DNA of 64,000 nucleotides from Basidiobolus meristosporus CBS 931.73 (taxonomy: Eukaryota; Fungi; Basidiobolomycota): contig MCFE01000470.1 in assembly GCA_002104905.1 (NCBI GenBank), positions 1 through 64,000 of the forward strand, given 5' to 3'. A program made the position numbers and the translations under genes. Positions 1,517 to 60,657 of the stretch are shown piece after piece; positions within the stretch are counted from its first letter, which is position 1, and each line of letters begins with the position of its first letter. The notes beneath the pieces were generated by a model. That model saw only the letters and a program-made list of their open reading frames with translations. It was not told the origin of the DNA and did not search any database.

Positions 1517-1884
1517 TGTTACAAGTCTTGGTATAAGAGTTGTAGAGGAATAGGGAGTTTAGCTAGTATTGTATTCACTAAGACTTGAACTGATTTTTAT
1601 TGAGATTCCAGCAGCTCCTTATATACATTTTGCTAGATCAATTGCTGACTAATTGTATTTCCTAATGTAGATTGTGGCTGATGACTCATTTGATTGCATC
1701 ATCATCACCCAATAAGATCCTACTTAATATATCTATTTCTGACTGCTAAGGATCTGCTGATTCATTGGCTGACTAATGCTACTGACTTCATCGATAATAC
1801 TGATATACTGATAACCTAAACATATACTAATTGATTTGACTAAAAACTGATCTAACTTAAACATTCAAGCGGCAGATCATAACA
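1517..1884 (-). mobile_element. Solo LTR, family A (Ty3/gypsy)
   Basis: TGTTAC...ATAACA termini with 5-bp TSD CAAAA (1512-1516 and 1885-1889). Close match to 11199-11568. Confidence 0.9.
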
Positions 1885-2715
1885 CAAAAGCAACCCCACC
1901 TATTGATAGCTTCAGTAATGTAACTAACAAATCTTAACAACCAAAGATTGTGCTGCATGCCCTTTCACGGTGCAATGGAACAAGTTTGTTACTTTCATCA
2001 AAATATAGTGATCATTGTGGTGCAATGTTTTAATTAGAATTACAAAAGAATATACCCTTTGGATTATGACAAGTGATAGTAATTCAGTTCAGCTTCATCA
2101 ACTCCTCCTACTTTTTTTCACAGATAATACAACTGAACATTTGGTGGTAAGTCACTTTCACACCTAAACTACAACCTTGTTGACTATCATCCTAGCTACT
2201 TGTAAGCTTGTAGTCAGTATTTTGCTTTCTGATTGATGAGTGCAGTGTTATAGCTTGGCTGCACTGAATTGCTCCAGAGGATGTCACAAAACCAGCATGA
2301 AGTACAATGTGCTGACCTGTCTTTTACTTTCTAAAAGCTCCTACAATGAAGTTGATTGGAGTGGACCTTTGCTGGCCTGGTTCAATATACATAACTTGCC
2401 AATGGATAACAATAATGACACAGGCAGGCATGACATGATGTGTTGCTACAATTATATATATGACCTGGTCTGCTCCAATGGACCTGTATCTAATTGAGCA
2501 GTTTGGCATGTTCTGATAGTTTTGCTCTGAATTATGTGCATTGAATTGAAATGTGTCAACTTGGTGCATTGGACTCAGGCCCAGGATGTTGGCATAGATT
2601 TAACTGATGTGCACCAGTATGCTGACCTGTAGGGCTTGATGAGGAAATCAATAAGGCATGCTGGTGCAATCTTGAGGTACGGAGTACTGAAAGTTCCAAT
2701 AAGCTTCAAAGAAAC

Positions 2716-5700
2716 TGTTGCAATTCAAGAAGTGATTTAGTTATAAGGAACTTATCAACAAATAGTGATGATAGCTGAGCTGTTGTTTATTAGTAAAGAA
2801 GCTCAGTATTTATACCTCTGTAGAAGCAATACAGCTGTAACACCAAGTAAGGAGGGTTTCCCAATATTTAGGAGCATTCTGTATCAGTTTCAAGGTTATT
2901 AGATAATACTTAGGATTTGTGCTAATTTGATCCTGACTATAGGGGAATTACCATAAGATCCTAGATCTGGTGAAAGTGGCAAAGTTAGAGCTGTAACTTA
3001 GTCATACAGTGACCAGGACTAGTCTAGAATTGCCAAGTAAATATTTAGCTGCAGAATGATACCAAATAGCTCAATATTTCAACACTCCCCCTCAACTAAA
3101 TAATTTCTTAAACCTAATTTGTCCCTGAGATTCTCAAATTGTGGCCTAGCTAGTGGTTTTGTCAATATATCTACCACCATTTTGTTAGTTGGGCAGTACA
3201 CCATCTCCACTAAGTTATTTTCTACATCTTCCCTCACAAAGTGATGTGGTATATCAATGTGCTTAGTTCTGGCATGATTAGTAGGATTTCTAGCTAATGA
3301 AATATAACTTTGATTATCATTGCAAATACATATTGGTTCATCCGAGCTAAGACCAAAGTCTTTGAATAACTTTTGTAGCCATGTAGCCTCCTTAGTTGCT
3401 TGACATGCAGCCATATATTCTGCTTCAGTTGTAGATAGGGCCATAGTTGGTTGTTTCTTGCAATTCCAAGTAATAGCTGCACCAGCATAAAGAAATACAT
3501 AGCCTGTAGTAGAGCATCTGTCAATCAGAACCCTACCCTAGTCTGAATCACCATCACCATCAAATATTTGCCTGTTAGCTGCTGCAGAGTATTCCAGTAC
3601 CATATTTATGGTAGCTTGTTGATATCTAAAAATCTGCTGAACTGCTGCAATTTGATCTGATCCATAATTCTGCATGCATTGACTACTATTTCTACTGTCA
3701 CTGTAATATCTGGACATGTAGGCACTATTAAGTACATTAGGCTTCCAAACATTGATTGATATGGAAAGTCTTGGTCCATATTTGATCCGTTATCATCTAT
3801 TACTGGCTGAAATTTGCTTAATTTCAGGTTATTGTCTTTAGGGGCAGCTGCAGGTTTGCGGTTTTCCATTCAGAAGCATCTAAAAAATGTCTCTCATATA
3901 CTAAAACCAATTCAGCACATTTTCTGCGTAGGTATGTCAGATTAGACCTCAATTGCAAGAAAATGGCTCAATTTTCCAAGATCTTTCATCTCAAACTTGC
4001 TGAAGAGATCTGATTTTGTCTGTTTAAGTGCCTCTTGGTCACTTGTGGCTATAATTAGGTCATTCACATAAAGAACTAGGATTATTACACCCTTTTGGAG
4101 CTGTTTCACATATATACTGTAATCTGCAGTGCTTCAAGAGAACCCAATTTCCTCTAGATATATGTCAATCTTGTAATACCATGATCTAGGTGCCTGCTTA
4201 AGCCCATACAACAATTTTCTAAGTTTGCACACCTTATGTGTGTCTTTTGGATCCGTAAAACCCTCCGGTTGCTCCATATATATAGTTTCTCGCAAATCCC
4301 ATTTAGAAAGGCTGTTTTGATGTCTATTTGGTGTAGATCTACACTGTCCACAGCTGCCAAGGCTAGAACTGTCCTAATGGAGTTAAACCTGCCAACCAGA
4401 GCAAATGTTTCCTTAAAGTCTAGTCCCTGGATTTGGGAATAGCCTTTAGCCACCAATCTAGCCTTGTACTTATCAATGGCACCATTGGAGGTTATCTTGA
4501 ATTTGTAGACCTATCTACATCCTATTGGCTTTCTCTCATTTGGTCAATGTACCAGTTCCTACATTTTTGCCTTGGTCAGTGATTGGTACTCCTCCTGCAT
4601 GGCTTGTTGCCACATAGTAGCATCTGGTTTTGGCATTGCCTGTTCCAGGTTCTGAGGTTTAGCACATAAGGCAAGGTAACCTTCTTCATGATCATTGAAT
4701 GTCGGCCACCAGGATCCAAGGGCATTTCTTATGCCAGTAGATCTCCTAACTGGGATAATCTATTCTAATCTGGAACTGGTAGAAGTGTCTTCTTTATCTG
4801 GCTGGATTTGGTATGTATCTTCTGCATTAGTGTTGATTGCATCATCAGGCAGCTGGCCAATGATTTCTGTGGCTTTCTGATCCAAATTCTCCTCAAATAC
4901 AATGTCCCTGCACTTGATCTGCTTCTGAAGATTGCCATCATACACTCTATCCCTTTAGTGTCATTACAATACCCAAGAAATATCCCTTTCCTACTCATTT
5001 GTTCCAACTTTGAGCGTTTTTTGTCAGGGATGTGATAAAAAACATCACTGCCAAAGATCTTGAGGTGCTGGAGATCTAGTTCCTTGCATGTATATGCTTC
5101 AGAGAGTGTAGAATCAAGTAGTGCTGTTGTTGGGCATCTGTTCTTGGGTATACTGCGGTAGCAACAGTTCAGCTCAAAACTTATAGTCCATTCCCTTATC
5201 ATGTAGCAAAGATCTTCCCATCTCTACTATTGTTCTATTTGCATGTTCTGCTACTTCATTTTGCTGTGGAGTATGAGGAACTGTGGTCTGCTGAGGTATA
5301 CCAATAGATGAGTAGTATCTTGCAAACTCCTTTGAACAGTGTTCTCCTCCATTGTCACTTTGTAGTACCTTCAATTTACACCCAGTTTGTGTTTCTACCA
5401 TATTCTTGAAGTGCTTACACGTCTCTAAAGCCTCATCCTTTGTTTTGAGGAAGTACACCCATGTATATCTTGTTTTGTCATCAACAAACGTCATAAATTA
5501 CCTCTTGGCTCCATATGGGCCATATATGTCTAAGTGTACAATAGCCAATATTTCAGTGGTACTTATGTCTTCTGAGCTCTTGAAACGTTGCCTAGCTTAT
5601 TTGTCAAATGAACATCCCTTGCAAACATTCATTTTGATTGGAGTTGAGTATTTTACAACCAAAACAAGCTGATTTCTCACCAATTGGCTTATTTTCTGTT

Positions 5701-7381
5701 CCCCAATGTGACCTAGCCTTCTATACCACATCTCTGAGTTTGTTTCATCAGTTTCAGCAATGTTGACATACTCAAGTGCAATGAACTTGCATTGTAACTT
5801 GTATAAAATGTGATCTCTGATTTCCAGAGCTGATTTTTGTCCATTCATACTCAATATTGAGCAGCTCATCTTGGTAAAAGCAAATTTCAGTCCCTGAGCA
5901 GTTGCTTTACTGACTGAGAGTAGGTTCTTAGCTATTCCAGGTACATAGAGTACATCAGTGAGTCTTGCTGTTTTTGCCCCTGAGCTATTGCTCATGTTTA
6001 GTTGCATAGACCCACTTGCAGTAGCTTCCAGAGCAGAGGTATAACCCAAATAAACCTTTCTTACTGGAATAGTCTTGAAGTTGCTGAACCTCTCCTTTAT
6101 ACCACAAATATGCTGTGAGGCTCCAGAGTCAATATACCATTCATTAATTTGGTTACTCACACTCTCTTGTACGGTTACAAATAGCTGTTCATCAGTAGTT
6201 ATATGGTTTGCCTGCTCTAGTTTCTGTTTTTTGTCTGCTTGTTTCTTCTTGCATTCTCTTGCCCAGTGTCCTGGCTTTTTACAATAGTTGCAGCAACCAG
6301 GTTTTCTTTGATTTTGCTGCATTTCCTTCTTTTCTGTGTAACTCTCTGAACTGAATGAAGCATTATCTTCAATTTTCTCTGCTTGTTCATTACATCTGAG
6401 TTGTTCATGGAGGAGTCTTCCATTGACATAGTCTAAAGTCAAGTTGTCTTCTCTGCTTTCAAAATAAATAATGAGTGGCTCATACTTGTCTGGTAGGCTG
6501 CAAAGCATACAAAGTATATTTTCTTCATCATCTACACCAGCATTAGTACTGTAAAGTTCTTCTGCAAGTGTCTCCATTTTGGTAATGAGTTGTAGCATGT
6601 CATCATCTGGCCAATTCCTCATGCTGAAGAACTTTTGTTTTAAATAAAGCTTGCTTGATACTGACTTTGCTCTAAAGATCTTCTCTAAGGATTCCCAAGC
6701 TACTTTGGCAGTATATGAGGCATGGATTTGTCCAATGAAGGAATCTTGCACATTGTTACATATGGCATTAAAGGCCTTTTGCTCCTTCTCTTGACACTTC
6801 TCCACTTCTTCTGCTGTTTCTTCAGGCTCACCTTCTTTTCCTGTTACTATATTCCAAAGCTTCCTTTCCTCAGGGTGGATCTGCATCTTGATTCTCCAAA
6901 TTCTGTAGTTTTTTCAATCAAACCTCTCCTTTATAGGGAAAATGTTTTTGTTGTTCTGTTTGCTGGTAGAAGTCATCTTTAGAATAGATTAAGGCAATTG
7001 GGGCTCATAACCTGTTGCAATTTAGGAAGTGATTTGGATATAAGGAACTTTTCAAGAATCAGTGATGATAGTTGAACTGTTGTTTATTAGTAAAGAAGCT
7101 CAGTACTTATACCTTTGTAGAATTATTACAGCTGTAATACTAAGTAAGGAGGATTTCTCAATATTCAGGAGCATTCAGTAACAGTTTCAGGGTTAGTACA
7201 TTATAGTTGGTGTTAGTGTTAATTTGATCCTGACTATAAGGGAATAATCATAAGATCATAGATCCGGAGAAAGTGGCAAAGTTAGAGCTGTAAATTAGTC
7301 CCACAGTGACCAAGACTAGTCCAGAATTGTTAAGTAAATATTTAGCTGCAAAATGATACCAAATAGTCCAATATTTCAAAA
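2716..7381 (-). mobile_element. Full-length but degraded Ty1/copia LTR retrotransposon (copia-1)
   Basis: 369-bp LTRs at 2716-3084 and 7013-7381, roughly 85% identical by eye. 5-bp TSD GAAAC on both sides. PBS GGTTATGAGCCC (7001-7012, minus strand). PPT GAGGGGGAG next to 3084. Confidence 0.95.
3079..6886 (-). pseudogene. Copia gag-pol broken by stops and frameshifts
   Basis: Copia domain order: gag with CNYCKKPGHWAREC knuckle; protease WYIDSGAS; pre-integrase MWYRRLGH; integrase (FVDDKTRYTWVYFLK, LQSDNGGE); RT ([25 protein letters not shown]); RNase H (ALSTTEAEYMA, KHIDIPHHFVRE, DILTKPL). Confidence 0.95.
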
Positions 7382-8049
7382 GAAACATCAGGCTACCAGG
7401 AGAGAGCTGGTTAGGAACAAGCAGGCAAAAATGGATGCATCAGCGCAGTACACATCAGGGTGAGTACAATTTACAACTGAAGAGGCACTCAGGCAAAGTA
7501 GCAGTCAAGGGAAAGGTCAAGATAAACAAGGGTTCCTAAGCAAGGGACAGGAAAGAGTGAGAAATAACTCAGTTCTAGTGAACTTATGCTGTCAACCCAT
7601 ATCAAAATGAGGCCCAAAATAGCTAAGAAGAGCTACTAAATAGAAAATAGGTGTTTTCTCAGCAGTTTCAAACTCAGTCATCAAGTTAAACTTCAGTGAG
7701 GTTGATGAGCTTATAGAGAAAGGCAATTTGCCTACCAATGTCTCCATGTATTCCATGTAGTCAAAGTGGAGAAGCCACTAACAGACAAAGCAACAATGTC
7801 AGGGACTTGAATGATTAACTTAATGTCTACAGTGGAATTATGGAACATCAATAGGTACATCAAGAGGTTACTGTGGAATGTATGATTACCATACTACAGT
7901 GCCATGTAATTTTGTGACATGTTTCAAACCTCAGGTGCTAGATTCACAGTACCATATGTATTGAGTACCAGATACATATCTTTAGTCTTTCTGTTCTCTT
8001 ACACATTCAGGTCAACTCTGATCTTGAAAAAAGGTCAATGGCCAGATCA

Positions 8050-8900
8050 GCTTCTCTTACTGGTGGTAGGCTCACAAACTCATTCTGCTTGGCCTTGAGT
8101 TCCTGATGCTCCCATGGTATGCTCACCATAGGGTGTTTGCATGCTAGGCTTGTAACAGCCTCTTAAATATCAGACTACTCTTCATCATTATACTTGACCA
8201 CTTCACAGATTTTCAATGCCTTTTGATCTGTAGGCTTTGGTACAAAAACTTCATTTTCTCCCTCCCATGCATTGATATATGTGTCTGTGATCCTTATCTT
8301 TGGGCACTGTTGTGGTGCTTCAATGACAGTATGATGTTGCTCTGCTGTTACATTGGGAAATGACTCAACTTGTGGTTGTATCATTGAGCTACTGGAGTTC
8401 CTCTTGGCAACAAAGATACTACTTTTACTAACTGTGATATTGATTGCTTCACATCTTTCATCAGCTCATCCTGCTTTTGTACTATTTGCTCATTTCTCTA
8501 GGCCATTGCATCTATCCTATCAGCCACTGCACCTAATTGCCTCATTAATGCATGGTATAAGCTGACAACATACTTGCAAATTCAGGTGGTGGTGAAGTTA
8601 TTACAGCCACTTGCCGGTCTTCAACTAAAGGTACCGGTTTTGCTACACTCTCATCTGCCTCAGCATTATAGTCAGTTTGCAGCACTGCAGATATTCCCAA
8701 TTGCCTACTTGACAGGGAGCCTGAGCAGTATGCATTATTCCCTTTGGTGGGCACACTGTCCACATGGCCTGTTTTGTTGTAGCCCCACTTGTTGCACTGA
8801 ATGTCAAGGCAAGCTTTTGTCCAACCTCTCTTCTGCTGCAGTCAGTGGTGGGGCTTAGTTGGAGCTAAACAACTTTGCTTTATTTTTTAGCAGCATATAT
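8050..8900 (-). pseudogene. Relic of the CACTA-associated accessory gene (ORF-X)
   Basis: 8175-8384 (FVPKPTDQKALKICE...) is homologous to 16954-17175 (FMPEPENQKTLKICE...). DNA 8600-9237 aligns with the flanks of 17659-18729 and with 18730-19240. Confidence 0.6.
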
Positions 8901-9237
8901 ATAGAAGTGAGTTGAACTAAAGGGGAAGTAGTGTTACATATATATGTGTAAGAGGTGCCACAACCTTGCTTATAATACTTCCTTTGGTTTGTCATTATTG
9001 AGCCTTACATTCATGCAGGTGCAAATTGTCAAATGCAAGACTGATTTAAACTCACATGAGTATTGACAAAAAAGTGATATGATGTTGTTAAATTGTCAAG
9101 TACCAAGCTGTCTGTCCCATGGATAAGACTGATTTCATTTGACACTCTAGGAGAAGCAAAGAATTACCATGTGGCTAGTGTAGCAAGCCTCTCAACCATG
9201 AAGCACAAAGACAGCATAAGAAGTAATACAAGGATTG

Positions 9238-11568
9238 TAGGGATGTCTTCTGGCTTCACCCTAATTTGGTTGTATCCTGACATGAAGTCAATCTTGCTGA
9301 AAATAGTGGCTCCATTGAGTTGGTCCAAGAGCTCATCAATCCAAGGTATGGGGTACTTATTCTTCACAGTAACTGAGTTGAGGGCTCTGAAGTCAATGCA
9401 CATCCTAAGTGCTCCATCCTTCTTCTTCACAAAAAGTACTGGTGCTCCCCAAGGTGACTTGCTGGGTTGGATATATTGTTGCTCCTATAACTGATCTACT
9501 TGTCTCTTCATTTCCTCCAGTTCCAATGGACTCATTCTGTAAGGTGTCTTGCTCACTGGAGGGCTATCTCCTGCTTCAATGGCATGAACCACATCTCTGC
9601 CTGGTGGTAGGCTTACAAGCTCTTCTGGAAATATGTCTGAATACTCCTTCAAAAGAATCTGGACCTTCTGGGGTCCTGGAGTTGAGGAAAGCTCCTGTAA
9701 TACTGCCATGAGGAACATCTGGGTGCCTTTTCTTAGTGCTCTACAGAACTCTGTCTTGCTAAGCTAACTTGTCTCACACACATTGGAATTGACCAAGCTA
9801 AAATCCAGTCTGGCAGGTAATAGCTCATAGGTCTTGTTGTCTTTCTGGATCTGAGTAGCATGGGTTCTCCAGTTGATTGATGGGTTACAACAAAATAGCC
9901 AGGTTTTCCCAAGTATAAGGTCAAACTTGCAGTTCCCAAATATATAGGCATGTAGATCTTCTTCATAGTCATTGATCTTCATCTTTACTGGCTGAGTAAT
10001 ACGGCTGATTATGTAAGAATTCCCATCAGCTGTTGAGACTGAAGTTGATTTGGTGGGCTCCAAGTTGATTCCAGCATTCAGAGCAAATTGCTCTGACATA
10101 TACTCATGTGATGCTCTTGAGTAAATCATGATCTTGGCAGGAACTCCATTGATTACTCCATTCAAGTATAATAGCTTTCCTGAGTTTGAGATCATCTGGG
10201 ATAGGTATTCTTCTGTCATGTGGAAGGTGAGTTCTGAGTCTTCCTCAAGTTCATCCTCTATGTTACTATTCTCCATGGCCTCAATACAGTTAAAGGTTCT
10301 TGATGGCTGGTGTCCATTTCTTTTCTGAGGGCAGTACTTTGCAATATGACCCCGCTGGTGGCAATTGAAGCAAAGTCCTTTCTTCTTACATTCTTCTGTG
10401 GTAGGATTCTTCTACATAGCGTCTATTTCCATTGGCACTGTTTCTGATTGTCTTCTTTCATAGAGATTGTAGCCCCTCTGATTAGTCATTGTGGGCTTCC
10501 CAACTCCAAACATAGCTGAGTCATAGTCAATGGCAATCGTGATGGCTTCCTCAATAGTCTGAGGTCTTCAATAATTCACTTCTTTACAAGTTCTTTCTTT
10601 CAGCCCATCAACAAAGTATTCAGCTAGATCCAGAGGGTCCATTCTTTCAGCTTGCCCAAGTAGATATTTATATTCATAGATGTACTCTTGGACCATTCCT
10701 TTTTGTCTGAGTGTCTTCAACTTTCTTTTTAGTAGTGTCTGTTGGTGTGGGGGCTCAAAGGCATCCTGAATCTCCAACATAAACTCATCCCAGGTAGAGA
10801 CTGTAGAGCATCCCATCATGGTGGCTGACCTGATATTGTTGTGGTACCACTGCAAAGCTGCATCTGCCAAGTAAGAGGCTGCGTAATGTAACTTGTTTTC
10901 TGGAGCAGTTCCTTTAGCTTTAAAAGCTTCTTCAATCTGAAAGAGCCAAGTTCCCAGGTTTTCATTGACTCTGCCATGGTACCAGTTGACCTTCACACTA
11001 AAGTTGCTCTTGACAGGGTTTTGCTGGCTTTGAGCCATGGTAGTCATTCCTTGTTGCTGCTGGTTCAGGATCTGGAATTAGTGTTGCTGCTGGGCCAGGA
11101 TTTGTTGCATATCATTCTTCCATTCTTGATTTGCCAACATCTTGAGGGAGGCTTCTTCTTTCTTCAGGAGGGATGTTTCTGGTTATTGCTGCTACCAATG
11201 TTACAAGTCTTGTTGTAAGAGTTGTAGAGGAATAGGGAGTTTAGCTGGTATTGTATTCACTAAAGCTTGAACTGATCTTTATTGAGATTTCAGCCGCTCC
11301 TTATATACTTTTTTGCCAGATTAATTGCTGACTAATTATATTTCCTAATGTAGGCTGTGGCTGATGACTCATTTGATTGCATCATTATCACCCAATGTGT
11401 TCCTACTTAATATAACTATTTCTGTCTGATAAGTCTCTGCTGACTCATTTGCTGACTAATGCTACTGATTTCACAGATAATACTGATATACTGATAACCT
11501 AAACAAATAACTAATTGATTTGACTAAGAACTGATCCAACTTAAACATTCAAGCAGCAGATCATAAGA
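9238..11568 (-). mobile_element. 3'-truncated Ty3/gypsy element (5' LTR, PBS, gag, protease, start of RT)
   Basis: Family-A LTR at 11199-11568 and PBS TGGTAGCAGC (11188-11197). Gag at 10568-11047, CFNCHQRGHIAKYC knuckle near 10330-10375, decayed protease at 9764-10276. [19 protein letters not shown]...[12 protein letters not shown] breaks off near 9238. Confidence 0.9.
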
Positions 11569-39174: not shown

Positions 39175-41839
39175 GTTCTTCAATCAAAAATGCAGTTTTG
39201 ACATTCATTTGATTAATAAAAAACTTGTACTTGGCACCAATAGCCATTATTAATCTGATGGAACTAAACTTGCCTACCAGTGCAAAGGTCTCAGTATGGT
39301 CAAGTCCTTTTGTTTAAGAGTATCCTTTGGGCACAAGTCTTGATCTGTATCTATCAACTGTGCCATCAGCTTTGTATTTTGTCTTGAAGACCCATCTGCA
39401 TCCAATTGACTTTTGGTTGATTGGGAACTTGACCAAGTCTCAAGCTTGATTTTCCATTAGGGCCTGATATTCCTCAGTCATTGCAGATCTCCAAGACTTT
39501 GTCTGAGGGCTATTTAGGGCCTCTTTTACAGTCTGGGGCTCATCAATATGGACTGAGTAGGCATAGGCTAAGTTTGTACCCTCATTGCTGAAGTAATTTG
39601 GCCTATTTCTTGCCCAATTGGATCTTTGGGCATTTGATACTGGAATGATCACTTCTGGGATATTCCTGGGCACTGATTCTGGCTGAACCACAGTTGTAGA
39701 GTCCTCTGGAGTGTAAAAACACTCATTGTTTTGCCCAGATTCAATCCTGAAAATTTGTGGACTTGAGATCAGATTTTTGTCATCATCCAATGTCATTTTT
39801 TGTGAAAATTTTGAATTTTCATCAAATAGCACATCCCTGGACTTAATTAGCTTCTTTGCTTTGGTATTGTAGAGTCTGTATGCTTTACTTTCATTGCAGC
39901 AACCCAATAGTATGTATTTTACACTTTTTGGCTCAAATTTTGACTGATTTCCAGGCAGTTTCTTGGCAGATGCTGTACACCCAAATATTCTTAGATGTTC
40001 TGCACTTGGTCTGTACCCACACCATGCTTCAAATGGAGTAGAACCACAAAGTATTCTGTTATAACTCCTATTTTTAAGGTATACAGCAGTGGCAACAGAT
40101 TCTGCCCAAAAATCATAGGATAATTTTTGATCATGGATCATAGATCTTGCCATTTCAATTATTGATTGGTTAGCATGTTCTGCTACTCCATTTTGCTGTG
40201 GGAAGTATGGTGTGGTAGTCTTTTGCTTTGTCCCATGAATTTTGCAGAAGTGGATGAAGAGTTTTGAGGTATATTCTCCACCATTGTCAGCGCATATTTT
40301 CTTGATTTTTCACCAGTTTCTCTCTCCACCATATCTTTAAACTCCCTGAGCTTAGACAGAGCTTCTTTCTTTCTCTCCATGAAGTAGCTCCATGTGTGTC
40401 TTGTATACTCATCAACAAAAGTGATCATATATTTCATCCTGTCTAAGGTTAAATTTTATATAGGTCCACATAGATCTGAGTGAATTAGATCTAATTTTTT
40501 CTTAGTTTTGACTAACCCAGAGCTCTTGAGCAGTTATCTGGCTTGTTTCCCATATATGCAGGCTTCACAATGCTCCAAACTAGCTGGGGGATCAATTTTA
40601 CTCTAGAAATTAGCTGATCTTTGACCATTTTGTGCAAATAATCATAATTGATGTGACCAAATCTCCTGTGCCAAAGCATTGGTATTTCTTCATTTAAGTT
40701 ACCTATATTGGCTTCCAAATATGATGTAATATAAGTCAACTTGTGTAGATTCTGATCTCTGATACCCAAAGCAATATGGGCACCATTTTGATCAGTGATC
40801 TTGCATCCAGAATTGTCAAAGATGAAACTGAGTCCTTCTGTAGTGGCCTTGCTTATAGAGAGTAGGTTCTTGGCTATTTCTGGTACATAGAGTACTTCTT
40901 TGAAGGTCAGTGTATGGCTTCCTTCACTGCTTCTAAGGTCTACTTGGATGGTTCCTTCTCCCACTGCATTAAGTGTTCTATTGTCACCCATAAAAACCTT
41001 CTTGATTGGAATTTCTTGATATTGGGTAAAAAGTTCTTTTTGGTGTGTAAAGTGTTGAGATGCTCCAGAGTTAATATGCCATGTTTGAGAATCCTTGTTT
41101 GTGGTCCTATTTAGTGCATTTATGAATAGTCTATCTTCAGTTGTTGCAGCATTTCCATATTCAGGCTTTTTCTGCATACTATCTTTCTTTTTGAAGCACA
41201 GGTCTGATGTGTGTCCTTTCCTTTTGTAGTAGTTACAAATCAGGTTGCTGTTGCCTTTGTAGGGTCTTAAGTACCTTCTTTGTTGGTTATTGTTGCTTAT
41301 TGAAGCATTTTCTTCTTCCTTCTTATTGGTGCTTGATTTTCTTAATTCTTCATGCAGGTGCCATACATATATGTAATTTAAGGTCAAATCTTCAGTTTTG
41401 GACTCTAGGGCTGATTCAAGGCCCTGAAACTTATCTGTCAGGCTATTTAGGATGATACCTACCCCATCCTCATCAGTAGTTGGTACACCCACAGATTCCG
41501 TTTCATCTACCTGCAGGGTAATTATGTTGATTAGATTGTTCATTTCCTCTCCTGGCTGCATCTTTGTAGTAAGAAATTTTTGTCCCAGATACATTTTCTT
41601 AGCAGCTAAACATGGCTGGTAGGAGTCTTCTAATACCTTCCAGGCATTCTTTGCCATTTTTGCTCTTGAGCATTGAATTAGCAATTTGTCTTTAACATTA
41701 AGGCAAATGCAGTTAAAGGCACTTTGTTCTTTCTTCTGGTACTTTGAGGCTTCCTCTCCTGCATTTTTAGTAGGGCATTCTTCTATCATGACAATTTCCC
41801 AAAGACCTCTGTCTTGTATCAGCATCTTCATCTTCACGT

Positions 41840-42910
41840 TGTAGTGGGGTGACAGTGACACCCACCAACAGATGTGCTCATTCCCTTATTTTCTACTTCC
41901 CTATATCCCTACTGCACTCATTTTAGTTTTATCCCATTTGTCTTACCCAATCAGTACTATCCCATAAGCCGGTTGACTATCACACCTGCTTACCTTATTG
42001 CATAAGTTACCCCTCACTTTATGTAAGATTACTAGCTATAAGTACTTCTATATTAGGCAAGTACCCGTGCCAGTACCTGTGACACATGACCAACCCGTGT
42101 CACCTTCCCTACCATTTCCATACCATATATGGTATCCCCATGTTACACAGGTTTCAGAATACTGATTCCTGATTGGTTGGATGTGCTGTGCCTCTTAGAA
42201 CCTTCTGGCACCTACTTAGAACATTCTTAGGTCATTCTGATGTCATTAAGATTTCTATTGATATCCGGAACCTTCTGGAACACCATGATTAGTAATCACT
42301 TAGCCGGTAAGAAAAGTATATAAGGGAGGCTATCCCTCAACAATAAATCATCATCCCTTTTATCAATATACCAACTTGTTGATTAGTGTGATCACTGCTA
42401 CCTGCTGCTACCTGAACTTCCAACCCTAGACCACAGGACACTCCCAGGAAACCGCGCTGACAGCCAATTGACCTTGCAGGCACTACTTGTGAGGAATACT
42501 CAGAGTAGGTATCTTTTATTATATTTGATTCTTTCCCAAGTTTGTTCTTGTACAGGCAAAGATACTTTTCTGTCTTTGTAACTATTGACCACAGCTGCAT
42601 TCTTATCAAGTCCCTGCTGGTGGAATTTACAGTTGTTTTGACTTTGGAAGCTTTAGTACATTGTCATCTCAAAGGACGCTGAACCCAGCACATACTTTTG
42701 TTAAGACGCCAACTTAGTTGGGGATTGTAGCTCAATAGTTTTCCCTTGACAAGCTTGTGGCTTTATTCCCCTTCACATTAGATTAGAAACAGAACCCAAG
42801 TATTCCTAGCAAGCTTTTGCCAGAGGTTATTGCACCCAGTGAACACCCCACACACCAAACACTTCAGAAGTGTTGGACGTATCTCTCCCTTGGACCTATA
42901 CACCACCACA
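41840..42910. mobile_element. Solo LTR, family B (1071 bp, opposite orientation), inserted in copia gag
   Basis: Reverse complement of 17659-18729. TSD ACGT/ACAT. Confidence 0.92.
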
Positions 42911-51055: not shown

Positions 51056-51827
51056 ATGTTAGAGAACTGGTCGTACACGGACATCTTTTTCCTACTGGCT
51101 CTTCCTGTTCTGCTTCATTTCACCTTGACGAAGCTGTGGTTTTCCAAATACGCAAAGTCCGGCAAGAAGGTAAGATTCAGTGGGAAAGACCAGGTAGTTG
51201 AGCACGAGGCCGGGGAAGAGAAGGAGGGCGAGACCGCCGAGGAGAACAAGAGCTCGGATGGGAATGAGGCTACCAAGTAAGTGTCCCCCCCGGAACCTCC
51301 CTGTGAACCTTCTTCCCTGACAATTCCAACCGAAAGTGAGAAGAAAAAGCGAGAGTTTCCTCCGTTGAGGCCACCCGAGGATTACCCGTTCACCGCGAAG
51401 GAGCTGGCCAAATTTGACGGCTCCGATCCGGAACTCCCGGTCTATGTAGCCATCAAAGGAGTGGTGTTCGATGTCACTTGGAACAGAACCGCCTACGCAC
51501 CGGGAAGCGGTTACCATGTGTTTGCCGGCAAAGATGCCTCCAAAGTAACCCGCTTCTCCCATTTCCACTGCGGACAAAACGACTCATCCGTATTTCCTAG
51601 GCACTTGGAATGAGCTCACTAAAAGCCGAAGATTGCACTGCAGACTACAGCAGCCTGAATGACAAGCAGGTAAACAACCACCTTTCCTTTTCCTTTTCTT
51701 TGGGTTGAAACCCTCGCTGACCAACCCCTACTCTAACCTAACTGGTAAACAGAGAGAAACCCTAGATGGCTGGTACAAATTTTTCATGAAGCGGTACAGT
51801 ATTGTTGGTCGGGTTACTCAAAACTAG
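51056..51827 (+). CDS. Membrane-associated progesterone receptor (MAPR/Dap1-like) cytochrome b5-type heme/steroid-binding protein, 4 exons
   Basis: Exons 51056-51276, 51337-51544, 51601-51669 and 51753-51827. N-terminal TM helix, then FTAKELAKFDGSD..PVYVAIKGVVFDVT...Y.PG..YHVFAGKDASKALG...LDGWYKFF.KRY.IVGRV. Confidence 0.9.
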
Positions 51828-52619
51828 AGAAATTTCGAATCACGCACTTGTGAAGCGACAATAAAGCACCCTCCTGAATAAAGCGGACTCTTTAAAATGA
51901 CGCAGCGGTTGCATGCCGGACAATGGTCACTTCTTTAACAGAGCGGAGGCATGTTTCGGCCAAACCATAGTCATGCTGCCATATAGTTTGTTGGATACTG
52001 ACCATAGATCAGATTGCTGCTGCTATAGTACGCCCACTACGCAACTAGTTGTCAATATTTAGCAATTTGTTTAAAATAGCAAACCAATTCGGCATGTACA
52101 CATCCAATAAAAAACGGATATTTTGGATGGAATTTTTAGGGTGTGAATTGTCATCAGGGCTAGGGTTTAGGCGGGATTTTCTTGGTCATATCACTGTGAC
52201 ATTGCCTTACCAGGGATGATTTTTTTAGAGATCGGCTGATGTTTTTTCTGTTGATTTTTTTGGTGAGTGACAGTTACGGTGAAATCCAGGGAACCAATGC
52301 TATTGGCCACCTCCCTGTTGAAGAATTGTTAATCCTTCTGATTTAGGTTGGCGATCCCACTAATTCACCCATCTATGCTTGGATATTAATGGTGCCAGGT
52401 TCGCGAATATTGACATAGGTATGCGCAATACTGGCAAATTCATCTAGAGTTTAAAGAGGGACTTTTACTACAAATATCCCTGGAGCAGTCTTAAAGGCCA
52501 GTAATGTAGATAATTTAATGGAAATCAGATCAATTAGCGGATTCCTTGACAATCTATTCCAAAAGCGGGTTCAACCAATCAACAAAAGTCCAGCACTCGA
52601 TTTTGTACAAGGGTGGTCA

Positions 52620-53401
52620 AGACCCTACGCATAGAATCAACAACATTGTGGTGGATATTGGTTGCCATCAATCATGCAACTGGCTGGCCAATTGTACGAG
52701 CAGCAATGAATCCAGAGTACCAAGAGATACGGCAAAATCACTCTTATGGGGCATCAGAAATAAAAATGACATGCGTAAACGTACCGAACGAGAATTGGAG
52801 AAATTAAGACACCACCGCCAAGTAGCGGAAGAAGCTCAGAAGCAGGTAGCAATGAAAATGCAACTACACTGAAACCAAGCAGTAAAAGAACGGAAGGATG
52901 AGCTGAAGAAAGGAGACCAGGCATGAATCCGGAATCAAGCGCGAATGAAATTTATGTCAGTTTGACTGGGTCCCTTCAAGATTACTCGAAAGATGCAGCT
53001 TGGAACATGTCAGCTAAAGGAACAGAATGGTCAAAATTTATAGGAATTATATCACGGCAATTGCCTTACAAAGGCATCATACGACATACCAAGCCGAAGA
53101 AGAGCGAATCCAGGAGAATCCTCAAACTTAAGAAGGGAAGAATGTCAAAGACAATACGAATCAAAGGCAACAAGTGAAATATGCACTGATTATAAGAAGG
53201 ATGATCCGAAACAACACTATATAAGCATCTGGATAAGGGTCCAGTATTACACAGATATAACACTACCACAGCTCTGGAGCAGAACAGAATCGTATCACTT
53301 TAGTAAAATAAAGTGTGTCTATTAAACATGTCGAAATTATAAATGGACGCTGGAATTCAAGACAGGCTTCTTTTGGATACTTGATGGATCAGATTCCATA
53401 A
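52620..53401 (+). pseudogene. Relic of an older Ty3/gypsy: integrase fragments, PPT and probable 3' LTR
   Basis: WILVAINHATGWPIVRAA aligns with [44 protein letters not shown] aligns with [40 protein letters not shown] aligns with [18 protein letters not shown] of the adjacent intact element. Purine tract AAGAAGGGAAGAA (53130-53142) is followed by TG. Confidence 0.8.
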
Positions 53402-53760
53402 TTTTCTGTTATGATTTAAATCCTAACTAGTCACTACCGATCACTTGAACACTACTGATCGAACACCTGGAATTCCACACAGACGATCAATCGCACTCAG
53501 TGATACACACGTTATTTAATACATCTTGAACCCTCCTTTTGGAAGCTTGCCCTACGTTATCGGAAGCTCTCCCTCCGAGGCTATCTCTATATAAACTCCT
53601 TTGAACACTATCAATAAAGCATCAACCTTTTACCGGTTCATCAACTATTCAGATAACCTCTCTGATTCGTATTGGACATCCTCCGGTCCTCCTCCGCTTG
53701 CCCTCGATTCATAACATTGGTAGCAGCGAACCTCCGATCTCCAAAAAACAAAAACCTCCG

Positions 53761-53940
53761 TACCTCCCAGAAACTTTTCCAATCTCTCAGAAACTCTTCC
53801 GATCTCCCAGAAACTTTTCCAATCTCTCAGAAACTCTTCCGATCTCCCAGAAACTTTTCCAATCTCTCAGAAACTCTTCCGATCTCCCAGAAACTCTTCC
53901 GATCTCCCAGAAACTCTTCCGATCTCCCAGATATTCTTCC
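53761..53940 (+). repeat. 20-bp tandem repeat x9 in the retrotransposon 5' leader
   Basis: Unit ~GATCTCCCAGAAACTCTTCC. A 40-bp A/B alternation x3 is followed by monomers, with degenerate units on both sides. Confidence 0.95.
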
Positions 53941-54113
53941 AATTGTCCAGAGATACCCTCCGTACCTGCCCGAGACCCTCCCAACCTCCCAGAGAAACCC
54001 TCCGTTTCACTCAAAAAAAGAAAAAAAACAGTACCCAGTCAATTCTGCCAGAGAACCAGCCCCCTTGGTAAACACACCCGCCTACCGCAAATCAAACAAT
54101 ACCCAAAAACAAA

Positions 54114-57100
54114 ATGAGTGAAGAAAAGCCAAAATTTAGCTCTTCAGAAGAAATGTTGGCCTATATTGAGAGTCTTGAACAACAAGTTGCTGAGTTAGCC
54201 GGTCAAGGACAGTCCCACACAACTGAGCCTGCGGCCCTCCCTAGTCTGGACCCAAGAATGGGTAGGCAGACAGACTTGGACTCTTTACATTTTGTGAACA
54301 CCCAGAGATCATGGTTTACTGGTCAAGGTATACAGAGAGAGGGTGAAGCCTCATCTGTAAGACCTGCGGTGCCTCCCAATTCCTTGAATCTTGGAGAAGA
54401 TGGGCAAGGCTCTCTGGACTTCACAAAACAATATAGAGCAACAAATCTGAAACTTCAGAAACCCAACATCTTTGAAGGCAAAAGACACACTGCCACTCTA
54501 GAGACTTGGATATTTGAAGTAGAGCAGTACCTATACTTCTCAGATGACTCTGAAGAAGTCAAAGTACATTATGCCTGTTCACTTTTCAGAAAGGAAGCAA
54601 CCATGTGGTGGAAACTTCACATTCAAGGAATGAATAGGGGCATCTTTCCACCCATAGCCTCCTGGGCTGACTTTGTTAAAGCATTGAGAAAGAGGTTTAC
54701 ACCTATCAATGCTGATAGAATGGCAAGAGAAAAACTGTCCAAACTCTTTCAAGCCAAGTCTGTTCAAGAGTACAATGAGCAGTTTAACTTGCTTAGTATG
54801 GAAATTCAAAACATGCCTGATACTGAACTACTTGAGCAATACCTAAGAGGCCTGAAATCCAACACTAGATGGGAAATTGAATACAAAGACCCCAAAACCC
54901 TAGTAGAGGCTATGGAACTGGCAGAAAGATATGATGCCATACACTTCAGAAGGGCTGTCAACCACAGAATTGGTCACTCAAGAACTACTACAGGCCTCAA
55001 AGCCAATAACCACATACCTATTGGTAGTCAACCAATCACTGAACAAGGTGCACACTACCCCCACACACTGGAGCCTATGGACCTAGATGTTATGCAGAGC
55101 ACACCAAGACCTTCTAAAGAGGAATGCTTCAAGCTTGGACTATGCTTTTACTGCAAGGAACAGGGTCATAAAGTCAATGAATGCCCAAAGAGGCCATTAC
55201 AAAGAGTATTCCAACTCTCCACTAAGGAGGAGGAGCACACAATCAGCCTTGTTAAGGAGTATCAGAGGACTCAGAGCTTATATACTACCCCAAAGATGCT
55301 GAAACTCCCAGGGATTCTCAACAACAACCAATGTGTCTCTGTACTCATTGACAGTGGAGCAACTGATGTCTACATTTCAAAAGATGTAGCTGATCAGATG
55401 AAGCTACAAACAATCCCTTGCCCCCCAATTCACATCCTCTGTGCCACCAAGGAATCAATTATAGTGAACAGCAGGACTGAACCCTTGACTTTACAAATCA
55501 GGGACTTCCAAGACACCATTTCCCCAATTATCATACCCCAAGCCAACTTTGAAATCAATGTGGGACAAACTTGGCTAAGAAAGCACAATCCTGACATAAA
55601 CTGGCAGACTCAGGAAGTTGTAATCAACAAGGATGATGCAAAATATCATCTGTCACCCAAACCAACCCTGGACAAAGGCAATGCACCAGAACACACCATA
55701 TCAAAGAAACAGTTTGCCCACTCTATCAGACAGAATCCCAAACTGTTGCACATGATAGCCTTTGCCAAAATCCAAGAGACCACAGAAGTGACAAATGACA
55801 GGCTCAAGACCTTGTTAGCAGAGTTTCAAGAGGTTTTTCCCAAGGAAATCCCTGCACTACCCCCAAGCAGAGAGATTGACCATGCCATAGAAGTAACAGA
55901 TGATAAACCAAGAAACAGAGCCCCATATAAGTTCTCCCCAAAGGAAATGGAGACTTTGAAGGAAACATTGAAGGACTACCTGGCTAAAGGCTGGATAAAA
56001 CCCAGTAAATCACCATGGGGAGCTCCAGTACTCTTTGCTCCAAAGAAGGATGGGAAGCTACGGTTCTGTGTGGACTACAGGGCCCTAAATGCAATCACTG
56101 TCAGAAATTCCTACCCATTACCAAGAATTGATGCCCTCTTTGACCAACTGGGGAAGGCAAAGATATTCTCTAAAATAGACCTGGCATCTGGATATCACCA
56201 AATCAGAATTAAGCCTGAAGACACCTCTAAGACAGCATTCAACACAAGATATGGTCATTATGAGTTTGTTGTGATGAGCTTTGGCCTGACTAATGCCCCA
56301 GCAACATTTCAGACACTCATGAATAGCATCCTGGAACCATATTTAGAGAAATTTGTCCTGGTCTACTTAGATGACATTCTGATCTATAGTACCAGCATGG
56401 ATGACCACATGAAGCACTTGAAGACAGTACTGGCTATACTAAAAAAGCACAAGCTATATGCACAACTTCCTAAGTGTGAATTCCTCACCAGATCAGTTGA
56501 ATACCTTGGTCACATAATCTCAGATAAAGGACTACACATGGATCCAGCCAAGATAGATGCTATCCAGAAATGGGAAGCCCCAAAGTCACTCACTGAAATG
56601 AGATCCTTCCTGGGACTTGCATCATATTACAGAAGATTCATCAGGGACTTTGCAACTATTGCAGCCCCCCTTACAGACTTGACCAAAAAAGAGAAAGACT
56701 ATATATGGACCCCAAACTGTGAGACAGCTTTCCTAACTCTGAAAGAAAAGCTATGCCAAACCCCTGTGCTTCAGTTGCCTGATTTCTCAGAACCTTTCTG
56801 TGTATACACTGATGCTTCAGATCTAGCTGTTGGAGGGGTACTGACTCAAAAAGAACACCCGGTTGCTTATGAGTCCAAAAAGCTATCAGTAACTGAACAA
56901 AACTACCCAGTCCATGAAAAAGAACTCTATGCCATACTACATTGTCTGAGAGTGTGGAGATGCTACTTGGAGGGCAAACACTTTGTGGTATATACAGATC
57001 ATGCATCCCTAAGATACATTCACACCCAGAAGCTATTATCCAGAAGAATAACTAGATGGATTGAAGAACTACAACAATTTGATTTTAAAATCCACTACCT

Positions 57101-58463
57101 CCCTGGGCCAAAGAATACAGTTGCTGATGCACTCTCAAGGCAACATATATCAATGGTAGATCATGAGTTGGACTGGCCAGAATACATGCCAGAGTACTTG
57201 GCAAGTCAGACAATGCCAGAAGATTTATCACAGGAAGTAAGGGTCAAGATTAAGAAAGAAGCAGAGAATTTCTCATATGGTGAAGACGAGGTACTTTACA
57301 GACACATGGAAGAAATAGGGCCTGTACCATATATTCCATTTGTATACAGAGGTGACATGATAATCAAGAATCATAAAGCCTTTGGACATCTGGGCATCCA
57401 AGGAACTTATGAAATAACTAAAAGGAGAGCCTGGTGGCCTAAACTCAAACAATTTATAGCTGAGACCCTCAAGACCTGCCCTGAGTGCCAGCTGGCTAGA
57501 CCATACAACAAGGAACATGCCCCATTAGAACCACTGACTCCAGTTCCAGCATTCTACAGATGGGGAATTGACTTCATTGGAATATTGCCTGAAACTTCAA
57601 GAGGGAACAAGTGGATCATAACTGCAATTGACCATACCACTAAGTGGTGTATAGCAAAAGCCATGCCAGCAGCTACTGCAAAAAATGTTGCAAAATTCCT
57701 TTACCTGGAAATCTTTATGCAGTTTGGATGCCCAGGTGAAATTCTGTCTGACAGAGGAGCAAACTTTTTGGAACAAACCTTGAAAGAATACCTTCAGATA
57801 ATGGGGGTTAGACATTTGAAGACATCAGCATACCACCCTAGAACAAATGGGGTCACAGAGAGGTTCAATGGACTCTTTGGGAAGATGCTGACTACTTATG
57901 TCAAAGGAGCCAAACATAAGTGGGATGAATTTGTACATCAAGCACTCTTTGCCTGTCGTATTAGAGTCCATTCAGCAACACAAAAGTCCCCCTTCTACCT
58001 AGTGTATGGTACACATCCAAGAATCCCAGGTGATACCTTACCACCATACATCTGGGACTTAAAGAACCAAAAAGACTTGGCAGAATTCAGAACAAGGGAA
58101 CTGGAAGAATTAGGACATGCAAGACATGATGCCATCAAGAATTTAAAACGACAAGCAGAGAAGATGAAAGAACAGTACAACAAAACAGTGGTAACAAAAC
58201 CCTTAACTTTGGGAAAACTTGTATTAGTCCGAAATGAAAGTAGGCTAAAACTAGAACCACATTGGGTTGGACCCTTTATTATCACAAGAGAAATGCCCTT
58301 CAATACATTTCAACTCGCAGACATGTCAGGTAAAGTAAAGGAGGACCTAGTGCATAGAGACCGACTAAAGGAAGCACAGCTAAAAAACCCAATGACACCA
58401 CCAACCAAATACTGGTATTACAAGTCCGATAGACAGGACTCTTCAGGAGAAGAACCTCTTTAA
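54114..58463 (+). CDS. Single-ORF Gag-Pol polyprotein (1449 aa)
   Basis: Gag, [14 protein letters not shown] knuckle, protease LIDSGAT, RT YLDD, RNase H YTDAS...DALSR, integrase H-H-CC plus D,D,E and GPF motif. Gypsy domain order, and no chromodomain after GPF. Confidence 0.98.
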
Positions 58464-58794
58464 GTGTGGGAGTATGTTATGATTTAAATCCTAACTAGTC
58501 ACTACCGATCACTTGAACACTACTGATCGAACACCTGGAATTCCACACAGACGATCAATCGCACTCAGTGATACACACGTTATTTAATACATCTTGAACC
58601 CTCCTTTTGGAAGCTTGCCCTACGTTATCGGAAGCTCTCCCTCCGAGGCTATCTCTATATAAACTCCTTTGAACACTATCAATAAAGCATCAACCTTTTA
58701 CCGGTTCATCAACTATTCAGATAACCTCTCTGATTCGTATTGGACATCCTCCGGTCCTCCTCCGCTTGCCCTCGATTCATAACATTTCCAGGTT

Positions 58795-58866
58795 GGCTCA
58801 ATGGTCTAGTAGTATGATTCCTCGTTCGGGTCGAGGAGGTCCCGGGTTCAATTCCCGGTTGAGCCC
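58795..58866 (+). tRNA. tRNA-Pro, anticodon CGG, intronless
   Basis: Acceptor stem GGCTCAA/TTGAGCC, anticodon stem CCTCG/CGAGG with loop TTCGGGT, T-arm CCGGG-TTCAATT-CCCGG, A-box TGGTCTAGTAG, downstream TTTT terminator at ~58874. Confidence 0.95.
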
Positions 58867-59976: not shown

Positions 59977-60657
59977 ATGAATTCTGAATTACGCGCCAAA
60001 GCCTTCCTTTTCGACCTGGACGGCACGCTAGTCAATACAATCGCCGCTGCAGAGAGGCAGTACACCATCTGGGCCACTAAACTCGGGATCGACCCCAAGC
60101 CGGTGGTTGAATACTGCCACGGGGTCAGAGCAATCGAGGTGATGCAAAAGTTCGCACCCAAGGGGGCGAAGATCACCATTGACGATGCCAACGAGTGGGA
60201 AACTGGGTTCAGCAATGATTCGGAAGGGGTCTTCGTACTCCCAGGCATACCAGAGCTCCTGAAGAAGCTTCCCAAACACCGCTGGGCTATTGTTACTTCG
60301 GGCGTCCGTGCCATGGCTGAAGCAAGACTACGGCAAATGGATCTTCCTGTCCCTGACGTATTCATCACAGCAGACACCGTAACCCGTGGAAAACCTCACC
60401 CCGAAGGATACTTGGCTGCCGCATCCAAGCTTGGTTTCAGGCCCGACGAATGCATCATCTTCGAGGATGCACCGGCCGGAATCGAGGCAGGAGTTAGCGC
60501 CGGGATTCGCACTATCGGTATCACCACTAGCTACAAGCCAGAAACCCTCCACAAAGCGAATGTTCTCATCGATGATTATCATGACATTCTGGTGGAAAAG
60601 TCGGCCAACGAGGAGGAGTTTGAAATCAAGGTGCTAAGAAACAGAAGATCGGATTAA
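59977..60657 (+). CDS. HAD-superfamily sugar/glycerol-phosphate phosphatase (YfbT/Gpp1/Dog1-like), intronless, 226 aa
   Basis: Motif I FDLDGTLV, motif II WAIVTSG, motif III GKPHPEGY, motif IV FEDAPAG. ATG at 59977 in ACCATG context. Confidence 0.93.
   Translation: MNSELRAKAFLFDLDGTLVNTIAAAERQYTIWATKLGIDPKPVVEYCHGVRAIEVMQKFAPKGAKITIDDANEWETGFSNDSEGVFVLPGIPELLKKLPKHRWAIVTSGVRAMAEARLRQMDLPVPDVFITADTVTRGKPHPEGYLAAASKLGFRPDECIIFEDAPAGIEAGVSAGIRTIGITTSYKPETLHKANVLIDDYHDILVEKSANEEEFEIKVLRNRRSD

What the first reader, a model, noticed from the sequence alone, without database searches (positions are those of the whole stretch)
52620..53406. An older relative of the same element lies at the same tRNA-upstream site
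Seen: the unannotated ORF scraps left of the 5' LTR translate, across stops, into integrase segments that align with the neighbouring intact integrase (catalytic-core strand, RELEEL helix, GPF motif). A PPT and a TG-starting ~260-bp LTR-like stretch follow. That stretch ends GATTCCATAA about 5 nt before the new TSD, while the intact LTR ends GATTCATAACA. Inference: before the new insertion, an older element ended about 15 nt upstream of the same tRNA. That is two insertions of different age at one site, as expected for long-standing targeting.
Basis: partly seen in the sequence, partly recalled or inferred. Interest (0 to 1): 0.75.

Follow-up and report, generated by a model that had tools for sequence, protein, structure and literature searches.

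The report
Old retrotransposon relic beside tRNA gene
Just upstream of a freshly inserted jumping gene that sits 10 bases in front of a proline tRNA gene in the fungus Basidiobolus meristosporus lies the decayed tail of an older, different jumping gene, so this tRNA gene was probably hit twice: a known habit (yeast Ty3) seen here in an early-diverging fungus.

Summary
The integrase relic is real. A profile of 86 related integrases matches 52708-53160 in one frame (74 bits, E 3e-24, four stop codons). A second piece, 52649-52729, is the catalytic-core strand with its Asp changed to Asn. About 108 residues between the two pieces are deleted, and everything 5' of 52649 is gone.

The relic is not the same element as its neighbour. 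It is a different family of the same broad Ty3/gypsy clade: 34% amino-acid identity and no LTR similarity.

A 13-base purine tract followed by TG sits where a 3' LTR should start (53143). Pre-insertion DNA ends at 53406, so a 3' LTR starting there has at most about 270 bases before the tRNA gene. The last bases (GATTCCATAA) resemble the LTR terminus shared by two other families in the window.

I could not show that 53143-53401 is a repeat. There is no second copy in the window, and the tool that fetches other parts of this genome was closed. An old 3' end 9-15 bases upstream of tRNA-Pro is therefore probable (about 0.6), not proven.

The scan had already noted stacked tRNA-upstream LTRs on other DNA of this genome. 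This is one more, modest example.

The parts
52649..52729 (+). Relic of the integrase catalytic-core strand (WWILVAINHATGWPIVRA...). The second catalytic Asp is now Asn (codon at 52670).
   Evidence: HMM positions 112-138, 15.3 bits, E 2e-6; tblastn hits from several homologues
52708..53160 (+). Relic of the integrase C-terminal region (RELEKL helix, GPF motif). It reads in one frame with four in-frame stops at 52870, 52924, 52963 and 53041. About 108 residues of the core between this piece and the previous one are deleted.
   Evidence: HMM positions 247-392 of 410, 73.9 bits, E 3e-24; tblastn E 9e-14, 34% identity to the neighbouring polyprotein; stop coordinates
53130..53142 (+). Candidate polypurine tract AAGAAGGGAAGAA, followed by TG
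   Evidence: Purine runs of 12 or more followed by TG occur at 0.117 per kb per strand. It lies 174 nt after the GPF codons, against 206 nt in the intact element.
53143..53403 (+). Candidate decayed 3' LTR of the older element. It starts TGT, has TATATAA at offset 76 and AATAAA at offset 165, and ends within GATTCCATAATT. The 3' boundary is uncertain (53398-53403 favoured; 53362 possible).
   Evidence: Not verified as a repeat.
53403..53406 (+). Left copy of the 4-bp target-site duplication TTTC of the young element (right copy 58785-58788)
53407..58784 (+). Young intact Ty3/gypsy element: identical 310-bp LTRs (53407-53716, 58475-58784), primer-binding site TGGTAGCAGCG at 53718-53728, single 1449-aa gag-pol ORF at 54114-58463
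58795..58866 (+). tRNA-Pro(CGG) gene, 10 nt downstream of the young 3' LTR, followed by a TTTT run
   Evidence: ARAGORN; Rfam, 56 bits; sequence

Best explanation
52649-53403 is the decayed 3' part of an older Ty3/gypsy LTR retrotransposon: a piece of the integrase core, the integrase C-terminus, a polypurine tract and probably the 3' LTR. It belongs to a different family of the same broad clade as its neighbour. It had integrated in the same orientation just upstream of the tRNA-Pro(CGG) gene, with its 3' end about 9-15 nt from the mature tRNA 5' end.

It then lost its 5' part and about 108 codons of integrase by deletion, and picked up stops and a catalytic Asp-to-Asn change. Much later the young element integrated 10 nt upstream of the same tRNA gene (TSD TTTC) and pushed the relic 5.4 kb away.

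Inferred mechanism, by analogy with Ty3 and Tj1 and not shown here: TFIIIC reads the promoter boxes inside the tRNA gene and places TFIIIB at a fixed distance upstream, whatever the upstream sequence is. Integrase is tethered to TFIIIB and joins the cDNA at the Pol III start site. The promoter is internal, so each insertion leaves the target intact, and later insertions stack at the same spot.
For: Shown:
- The integrase relic is real and in one frame.
- Its best match among 88 polyproteins is the neighbouring element (68 bits). Clade members score 40-63 bits and distant gypsy elements 25 or less.
- The young element has 100% identical LTRs and ends 10 nt before the tRNA.
- PPT+TG lies 174 nt after GPF, against 206 nt in the intact element. 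The chance of such a tract in that spot is about 0.02.
- From 53143 to the tRNA there is room for an LTR of at most about 270 nt, against 310 nt for the new LTR.
- GATTC.?ATAA occurs at only four places on both strands of the window (128 kb scanned): both new LTR ends, 53392 and 32250(-). An unbiased end-to-end alignment test gives p = 0.01-0.05.
- A third gypsy family in the window shares the termini TGTTATGAT...TAACA and the same primer-binding site, so the motif marks LTR ends in these elements.
- With the gypsy polyproteins used as queries, the only retroelement similarity in the genic part of the window (46-64 kb) is at this tRNA gene.
- The organism is Basidiobolus meristosporus CBS 931.73.

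Context, not evidence: earlier unchecked scan notes describe LTR stacks 9-14 nt upstream of other tRNA genes in this genome.
Against: - There is no second copy of 53143-53401 and no 5' LTR in the window, so neither its nature as an LTR nor its 3' boundary is demonstrated.
- If the old LTR had the clade's ...TAACA end, its last two bases must have mutated (it reads ...CATAATT).
- A TGTC...GACA pairing would instead put the end at 53362, about 50 nt from the tRNA.
- The integrase reading frame stays open through the supposed LTR start to 53325.
- Another gypsy element with similar LTR ends (about 700-11566, minus strand) is not next to any tRNA, so targeting is not universal among these elements.
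- 29 distant metagenomic relatives show no adjacent tRNA.
Confidence: 0.6

Rival explanations
1. The relic is an older gypsy insertion that landed in this 1.5-kb intergenic spacer without aiming at the tRNA gene. Its LTR ended tens to hundreds of bases upstream (for example at 53362), and its closeness to the later, truly targeted insertion is coincidence.
For: The 3' boundary is undetermined. TGTC...GACA pairing fits an end at 53362. The pre-insertion spacer between the cytochrome-b5 gene and the tRNA is only about 1.5 kb, so proximity is not very improbable. A related gypsy element in the window is not at a tRNA.
Against: The relic's 3' end falls within 270 nt of the only tRNA gene in 64 kb: about 0.02 if placed at random in the 12.6 kb of genic DNA. 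The terminal-motif match lies right at the junction. A full LTR of ordinary length fills the gap almost exactly.
Confidence: 0.22
2. 53143-53401 is not an LTR. The integrase C-terminal tail continued to about 53325, and the old 3' LTR has been mostly lost, so nothing can be said about where the old element ended.
For: The frame is open for 93 codons from 53044 to the stop at 53323, running through the PPT. Some clade members have tails of 160-250 aa after GPY, and weak alignments reach 53247.
Against: The profile match fades after about 53100-53160. The extended alignments are weak (26-31% identity over the full HSPs). PPT+TG sits at the expected distance from GPF. TATA and AATAAA motifs are present. 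One open frame of three over this length is only mildly unusual.
Confidence: 0.12
3. The relic did not arrive by an independent integrase-mediated integration. It came by rearrangement, by capture of a truncated cDNA at a break, or together with a duplicated tRNA-Pro locus.
For: Only the 3' part survives, with two deletions. An imperfect 23/25-nt direct repeat (51990-52015 and 53373-53395) brackets the region.
Against: The bracket repeat is within chance (p = 0.02-0.15). Deletions are common in old relics. Nothing else points to a segmental duplication.
Confidence: 0.06

Closest known systems
Ty3 of Saccharomyces cerevisiae (Ty3/gypsy), with its sigma solo LTRs
   Same: It is an LTR element with the same domain order. 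[quoted passage not shown] The Pfam Ty3 capsid and Ty3 peptidase models hit the young element.
   Different: The host is an early-diverging fungus, not a budding yeast. The young element has a single gag-pol ORF, whereas Ty3 uses a +1 frameshift. The TSD appears to be 4 bp. The TFIIIB tether is not tested. The relic's exact end is unknown.
Tj1 of Schizosaccharomyces japonicus
   Same: It is a Ty3/gypsy element that inserts 1-10 bp upstream of the tRNA start site, and several related families coexist in one genome (PMC5911963).
   Different: [quoted passage not shown] Here the insertion is at a lone tRNA gene among ordinary genes.
DGLT-A of Dictyostelium discoideum
   Same: It is a Ty3/gypsy element with one ORF, found 13-33 bp upstream of mature tRNA coding sequences (PMC5911963, PMC5006619).
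   Different: It is an amoebozoan lineage, thought to have evolved its targeting convergently. The distance window is wider and further upstream.
Beta/Tca8 (Candida albicans) and Tyl3, Tyl6 and Ylt1 (Yarrowia lipolytica)
   Same: They are Ty3/gypsy elements found about 5-30 bp upstream of tRNA genes in fungi (PMC5911963, Table 1).
   Different: All are in ascomycete yeasts. I found no report for Basidiobolus or other Zoopagomycota.

Membership tests
Ty3/gypsy (Metaviridae) LTR retrotransposon - the relic | Retroviral-type integrase with a catalytic core and a C-terminal GPF/GPY region | tested here: met
   Profile HMM 73.9 bits, E 3e-24, plus the core strand at E 2e-6. Hits from 50 HSPs of gypsy polyproteins.
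Ty3/gypsy (Metaviridae) LTR retrotransposon - the relic | Domain order PR-RT-RNaseH-IN | not testable with these tools
   Everything 5' of the integrase core strand is deleted. The intact neighbour has this order.
Ty3/gypsy (Metaviridae) LTR retrotransposon - the relic | Polypurine tract directly before a 3' LTR that starts with TG | tested here: met
   AAGAAGGGAAGAA|TG at 53130-53144, 174 nt after GPF. Chance about 0.02.
Ty3/gypsy (Metaviridae) LTR retrotransposon - the relic | Two LTRs, or an LTR that recurs elsewhere as a repeat, with TG...CA ends | tested here: inconclusive
   No second copy in the 64-kb window. The 3' end reads ...CCATAATT; a CA lies at 53397-53398.
Pol III start-site-targeting retrotransposons (Ty3-like behaviour) | Element end within about 20 nt upstream of the mature tRNA 5' end | tested here: inconclusive
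   Young element: met, 10 nt. Relic: 9-15 nt if its LTR ends at 53398-53403, and about 50 nt if it ends at 53362.
Pol III start-site-targeting retrotransposons (Ty3-like behaviour) | Independent copies of the family at many different tRNA genes | not testable with these tools
Earlier scan notes claim this for other families in the genome; I did not check them.
Pol III start-site-targeting retrotransposons (Ty3-like behaviour) | Integrase binds TFIIIB or another Pol III factor | not testable with these tools
   Needs biochemistry or genetics.

The most novel reading that the evidence does not exclude
Start-site targeting of tRNA genes may be an old, shared trait of a whole clade of Ty3/gypsy elements in the early-diverging fungus Basidiobolus. 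On that reading, two families that differ by about two thirds of their integrase C-terminal residues used the same few bases in front of one tRNA gene at very different times. This would extend Ty3-like 'safe-haven' targeting beyond ascomycete yeasts and slime moulds. In addition, the relic has background CpG content (o/e 0.75), whereas the transposon nest and the young ORF are purged (0.06-0.07). That would suggest tRNA-adjacent copies escape the process that removes CpG from other transposons.
Probability: 0.4. Interest if true: 0.55.

Novelty: new member of a known kind. Interest (0 to 1): 0.32.

Why it matters
Repeated hits by different families at one tRNA gene are the genomic footprint of active targeting, as opposed to a lucky landing. 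If confirmed, this locus supports the view that Ty3-like targeting of Pol III start sites exists, and has persisted, in Zoopagomycota. That lineage is far from the yeasts and amoebae where the habit is documented (PMC5911963, PMC5006619).

This locus also keeps coding sequence in the older layer, so the older layer can be assigned to a family, which solo-LTR stacks do not allow. On its own it is a modest, partly unproven example. Stronger stacks have already been noted elsewhere in this genome by this scan.

Tried and rejected
- Second copy or 5' LTR of 53143-53401 in the window: none (blastn word 7; Smith-Waterman and semi-global tests against 51600-52650).
- Overall similarity between the old stretch and the new LTR, including transition-tolerant scoring: none beyond shuffles.
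- A closer relative of the relic among 87 database polyproteins: none above about 34%.
- Metagenome scan with the young polyprotein: 29 distant loci (26-50% identity), with no tRNA genes and no match to the relic or the old LTR. This is uninformative, because most contigs end at or inside the element.
- Tree placement of the relic: long branch, and the position changes with the column set.
- Decayed tRNA or other Pol III genes near the relic or near the other retroelements: none at E <= 1.
- A primer-binding site upstream of the relic: none.
So I could fetch neither other copies in this genome nor the orthologous locus in Basidiobolus ranarum (orthologue P0090).
- I did not run the search of protein representatives. 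The relic pieces between stops are 52 aa or shorter and decayed, and without the contig tool no LTR DNA could have been recovered from a hit.
- The search of earlier findings by sequence returned nothing.

Full report
**Setting.** The window comes from Basidiobolus meristosporus CBS 931.73. A HAD phosphatase encoded at 59977-60654 is 100% identical to an NCBI protein of that strain. This confirms a lead from an earlier scan note.

The window has two parts:
- Positions 1-45 kb are a transposon nest rich in copia elements, with CpG o/e 0.07.
- Positions 46-64 kb are GC-richer and genic, with a cytochrome-b5 exon at 51281-51613, the HAD gene and a Con-6 gene.

The window holds a single tRNA gene, tRNA-Pro(CGG) at 58795-58866 on the + strand. 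ARAGORN found it, as did Rfam at both thresholds.

**The young element.** Its features are:
- Two 310-bp LTRs, 53407-53716 and 58475-58784, are 100% identical and run TG...CA.
- A primer-binding site TGGTAGCAGCG lies one base after the 5' LTR.
- One ORF of 1449 aa carries Ty3-capsid, protease, RT, RNase H, zinc-finger and integrase-core domains.
- The 3' LTR ends 10 nt before the tRNA.
- The flanks read ...AATTTTC|TG and CA|TTTCCAGGTT, which gives a 4-bp duplication TTTC; a fifth base does not match.

**The observation.**
- tblastn of the young polyprotein against the window finds 52711-53076, equal to residues 1302-1421. Identity is 34%, E is 9e-14, and the match is in one frame with four stops.
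- It also finds 52652-52702, equal to residues 1167-1183.
- I built a profile from the integrase regions of 86 homologues and searched the six-frame translation, with X at stops.
  - 52708-53160 scores 73.9 bits, E 3e-24, over profile positions 247-392 of 410.
  - 52649-52729 scores 15.3 bits, E 2e-6, over positions 112-138.
  - Positions 139-246 are missing, an internal deletion of about 108 codons.
  - Nothing upstream of 52649 matches.
- The stops are at 52870, 52924, 52963 and 53041. The core strand reads AINH where relatives have AID, so the catalytic Asp is lost. RELEKL and GPF are present.

The integrase relic is therefore real and clearly dead, while the neighbour has identical LTRs. 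The difference in age is secure.

**How related the two elements are.**
- Over the shared segment the relic's best score among 88 polyproteins is with its neighbour (68 bits).
- Many clade members from other organisms score nearly as well (50-63 bits).
- Distant gypsy elements score 25 bits or less.
- Over the same segment the young element is itself only 33-48% identical to its clade members.
- A FastTree placement puts the relic on a long branch inside the large clade, but its neighbours change with the columns used.
- The DNA of 53143-53406 is no more similar to the new LTR than shuffled sequence is, even when transitions are forgiven.

The relic is thus a different family of the same broad clade, not an older copy of the same element.

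**Is 53143-53401 an LTR, and where does it end?**

In favour:
- A 13-base purine run followed by TG lies at 53130-53144. It is 174 nt after the GPF codons, against 206 nt in the intact element. Purine runs of 12 or more followed by TG occur at 0.117 per kb per strand, so one in that roughly 150-nt spot has a chance of about 0.02.
- TATATAA and AATAAA follow, at offsets 76 and 165.
- The stretch from 53143 to the tRNA leaves room for an LTR of at most about 270 nt, close to the 310 nt of the new LTR.
- The pattern GATTC.?ATAA occurs on both strands of the window (128 kb scanned) only at the two new LTR ends, at 53392 and at 32250(-).
- An unbiased local-alignment test compared the last 20-40 bases of the new LTR with the 20-40 bases before the insertion site. 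It gives p = 0.01-0.05.
- A third gypsy family in the window has LTR copies at 702-957, 1628-1883 and 11311-11566 on the minus strand, and internal gag-PR-RT similarity at 9194-11140. It starts TGTTATGATC, ends ...GTAACA and has the primer-binding site TGGTAGCAGCA. These termini are therefore shared among families here, which gives the motif some meaning.

Against:
- There is no second copy and no 5' LTR anywhere in the window.
- The end reads ...CATAATT, not ...CATAACA.
- TGTC...GACA pairing would allow an end at 53362.
- The integrase frame stays open to 53325, although the profile match has faded by about 53160.

With the young element and one TTTC removed, the old junction reads GATTCCA TAAT TTTC CAGGTT | tRNA. 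An old LTR ending at 53398-53403 would therefore lie 9-14 nt from the tRNA. An end at 53362 would lie about 50 nt away.

**What I could not do.** The decisive test is other copies of the old LTR and their distance to tRNA genes. The metagenome scan gave only distant relatives with no tRNAs beside them, which is uninformative. I ran no further search on pieces of 52 aa or less, because no LTR DNA could have been recovered from a hit.

**Interpretation.** The most likely history has four steps:
1. An older gypsy element integrated just upstream of tRNA-Pro.
2. It decayed and was partly deleted.
3. The young element of another family then integrated 10 nt upstream of the same gene.
4. That insertion displaced the relic by 5.4 kb.

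The mechanism is inferred from Ty3 and Tj1 (PMC5911963). TFIIIC reads the internal A and B boxes and places TFIIIB at a fixed distance upstream, whatever lies there. Integrase tethered to TFIIIB then inserts at the start site. Because the promoter is internal, the target survives every hit and insertions stack outward with age. Only the positions are shown here; the tether is an inference.

With the gypsy polyproteins used as queries, the only retroelement similarity in the genic 46-64 kb is at the tRNA gene. Placing a relic's 3' end at random within 270 nt of the tRNA in 12.6 kb has a chance of about 0.02.

I put about 0.6 on an old end within about 15 nt of the tRNA. I put about 0.2 on a non-targeted older insertion in the short spacer. 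The rest goes to 'not an LTR' or to rearrangement.

**Known or new.**
- tRNA-upstream targeting and layered insertions are classic for Ty3, Tj1, Tca8, the Yarrowia elements and DGLT-A (PMC5911963 Table 1; PMC5006619).
- My literature searches found nothing on this for Basidiobolus or its relatives.
- The scan itself has already noted several LTR stacks 9-14 nt upstream of tRNA-Leu, -Gly, -Lys and -Pro genes on other DNA of this genome. I did not check those notes, so they are context and not evidence.
- This locus is one more example. Its small added value is that the older layer keeps coding sequence, which shows it came from a different family.

Noticed in passing
window 52649-53406 compared with 54114-58463 and 1-45000: CpG o/e is 0.75 in the relic integrase and 0.60 in the old LTR-like stretch, close to the genic background of 0.8. 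The young element's ORF (0.06) and the whole transposon nest (0.07) are almost CpG-free. Either the old family was never purged, or this tRNA-adjacent relic has long evolved without the CpG-removing process.
   Followed up: partly
window 51990-52015 and 53373-53395: An imperfect direct repeat, TTGGATACT(GACCA/TGA)T(A/G)GATCAGATT, brackets the relic region with 20 of 23 aligned bases matching. Its chance level is 0.02-0.15 depending on the search space. It may be coincidence, or a trace of a rearrangement.
   Followed up: partly
window 702-957, 1628-1883, 11311-11566 (LTR copies), 9194-11140 (-), 11187-11197 (-): Another decayed gypsy element lies on the minus strand, interrupted by copia insertions. 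Its LTRs start TGTTATGATC and end GTAACA, and its primer-binding site is TGGTAGCAGCA, like the young element. It lies in the transposon nest with no tRNA gene nearby. LTR ends and primer are therefore shared among families, but tRNA adjacency is not universal.
   Followed up: partly
window 53764-53951: The 5' untranslated leader of the young element holds a tandem array of about nine 20-nt units, alternating in a 40-nt pattern: CTCCCAGAAACTTTTCCAAT / CTCTCAGAAACTCTTCCGAT.
   Followed up: no
window 5597-6886 (-), 39440-41861 (-), about 26.8-28.1 kb and 40.3-41.6 kb: Several copia-type elements have gag, beta-barrel and pre-integrase domains. Copies about 13.5 kb apart are 81-90% identical.
   Followed up: no
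window 53589-53619: In the young LTR the AATAAA signal (offset 207) follows the TATATAA box (offset 182) by only about 25 nt. The poly(A) signal would therefore lie at or before the predicted transcript start in the 5' LTR, and R must be very short.
   Followed up: no
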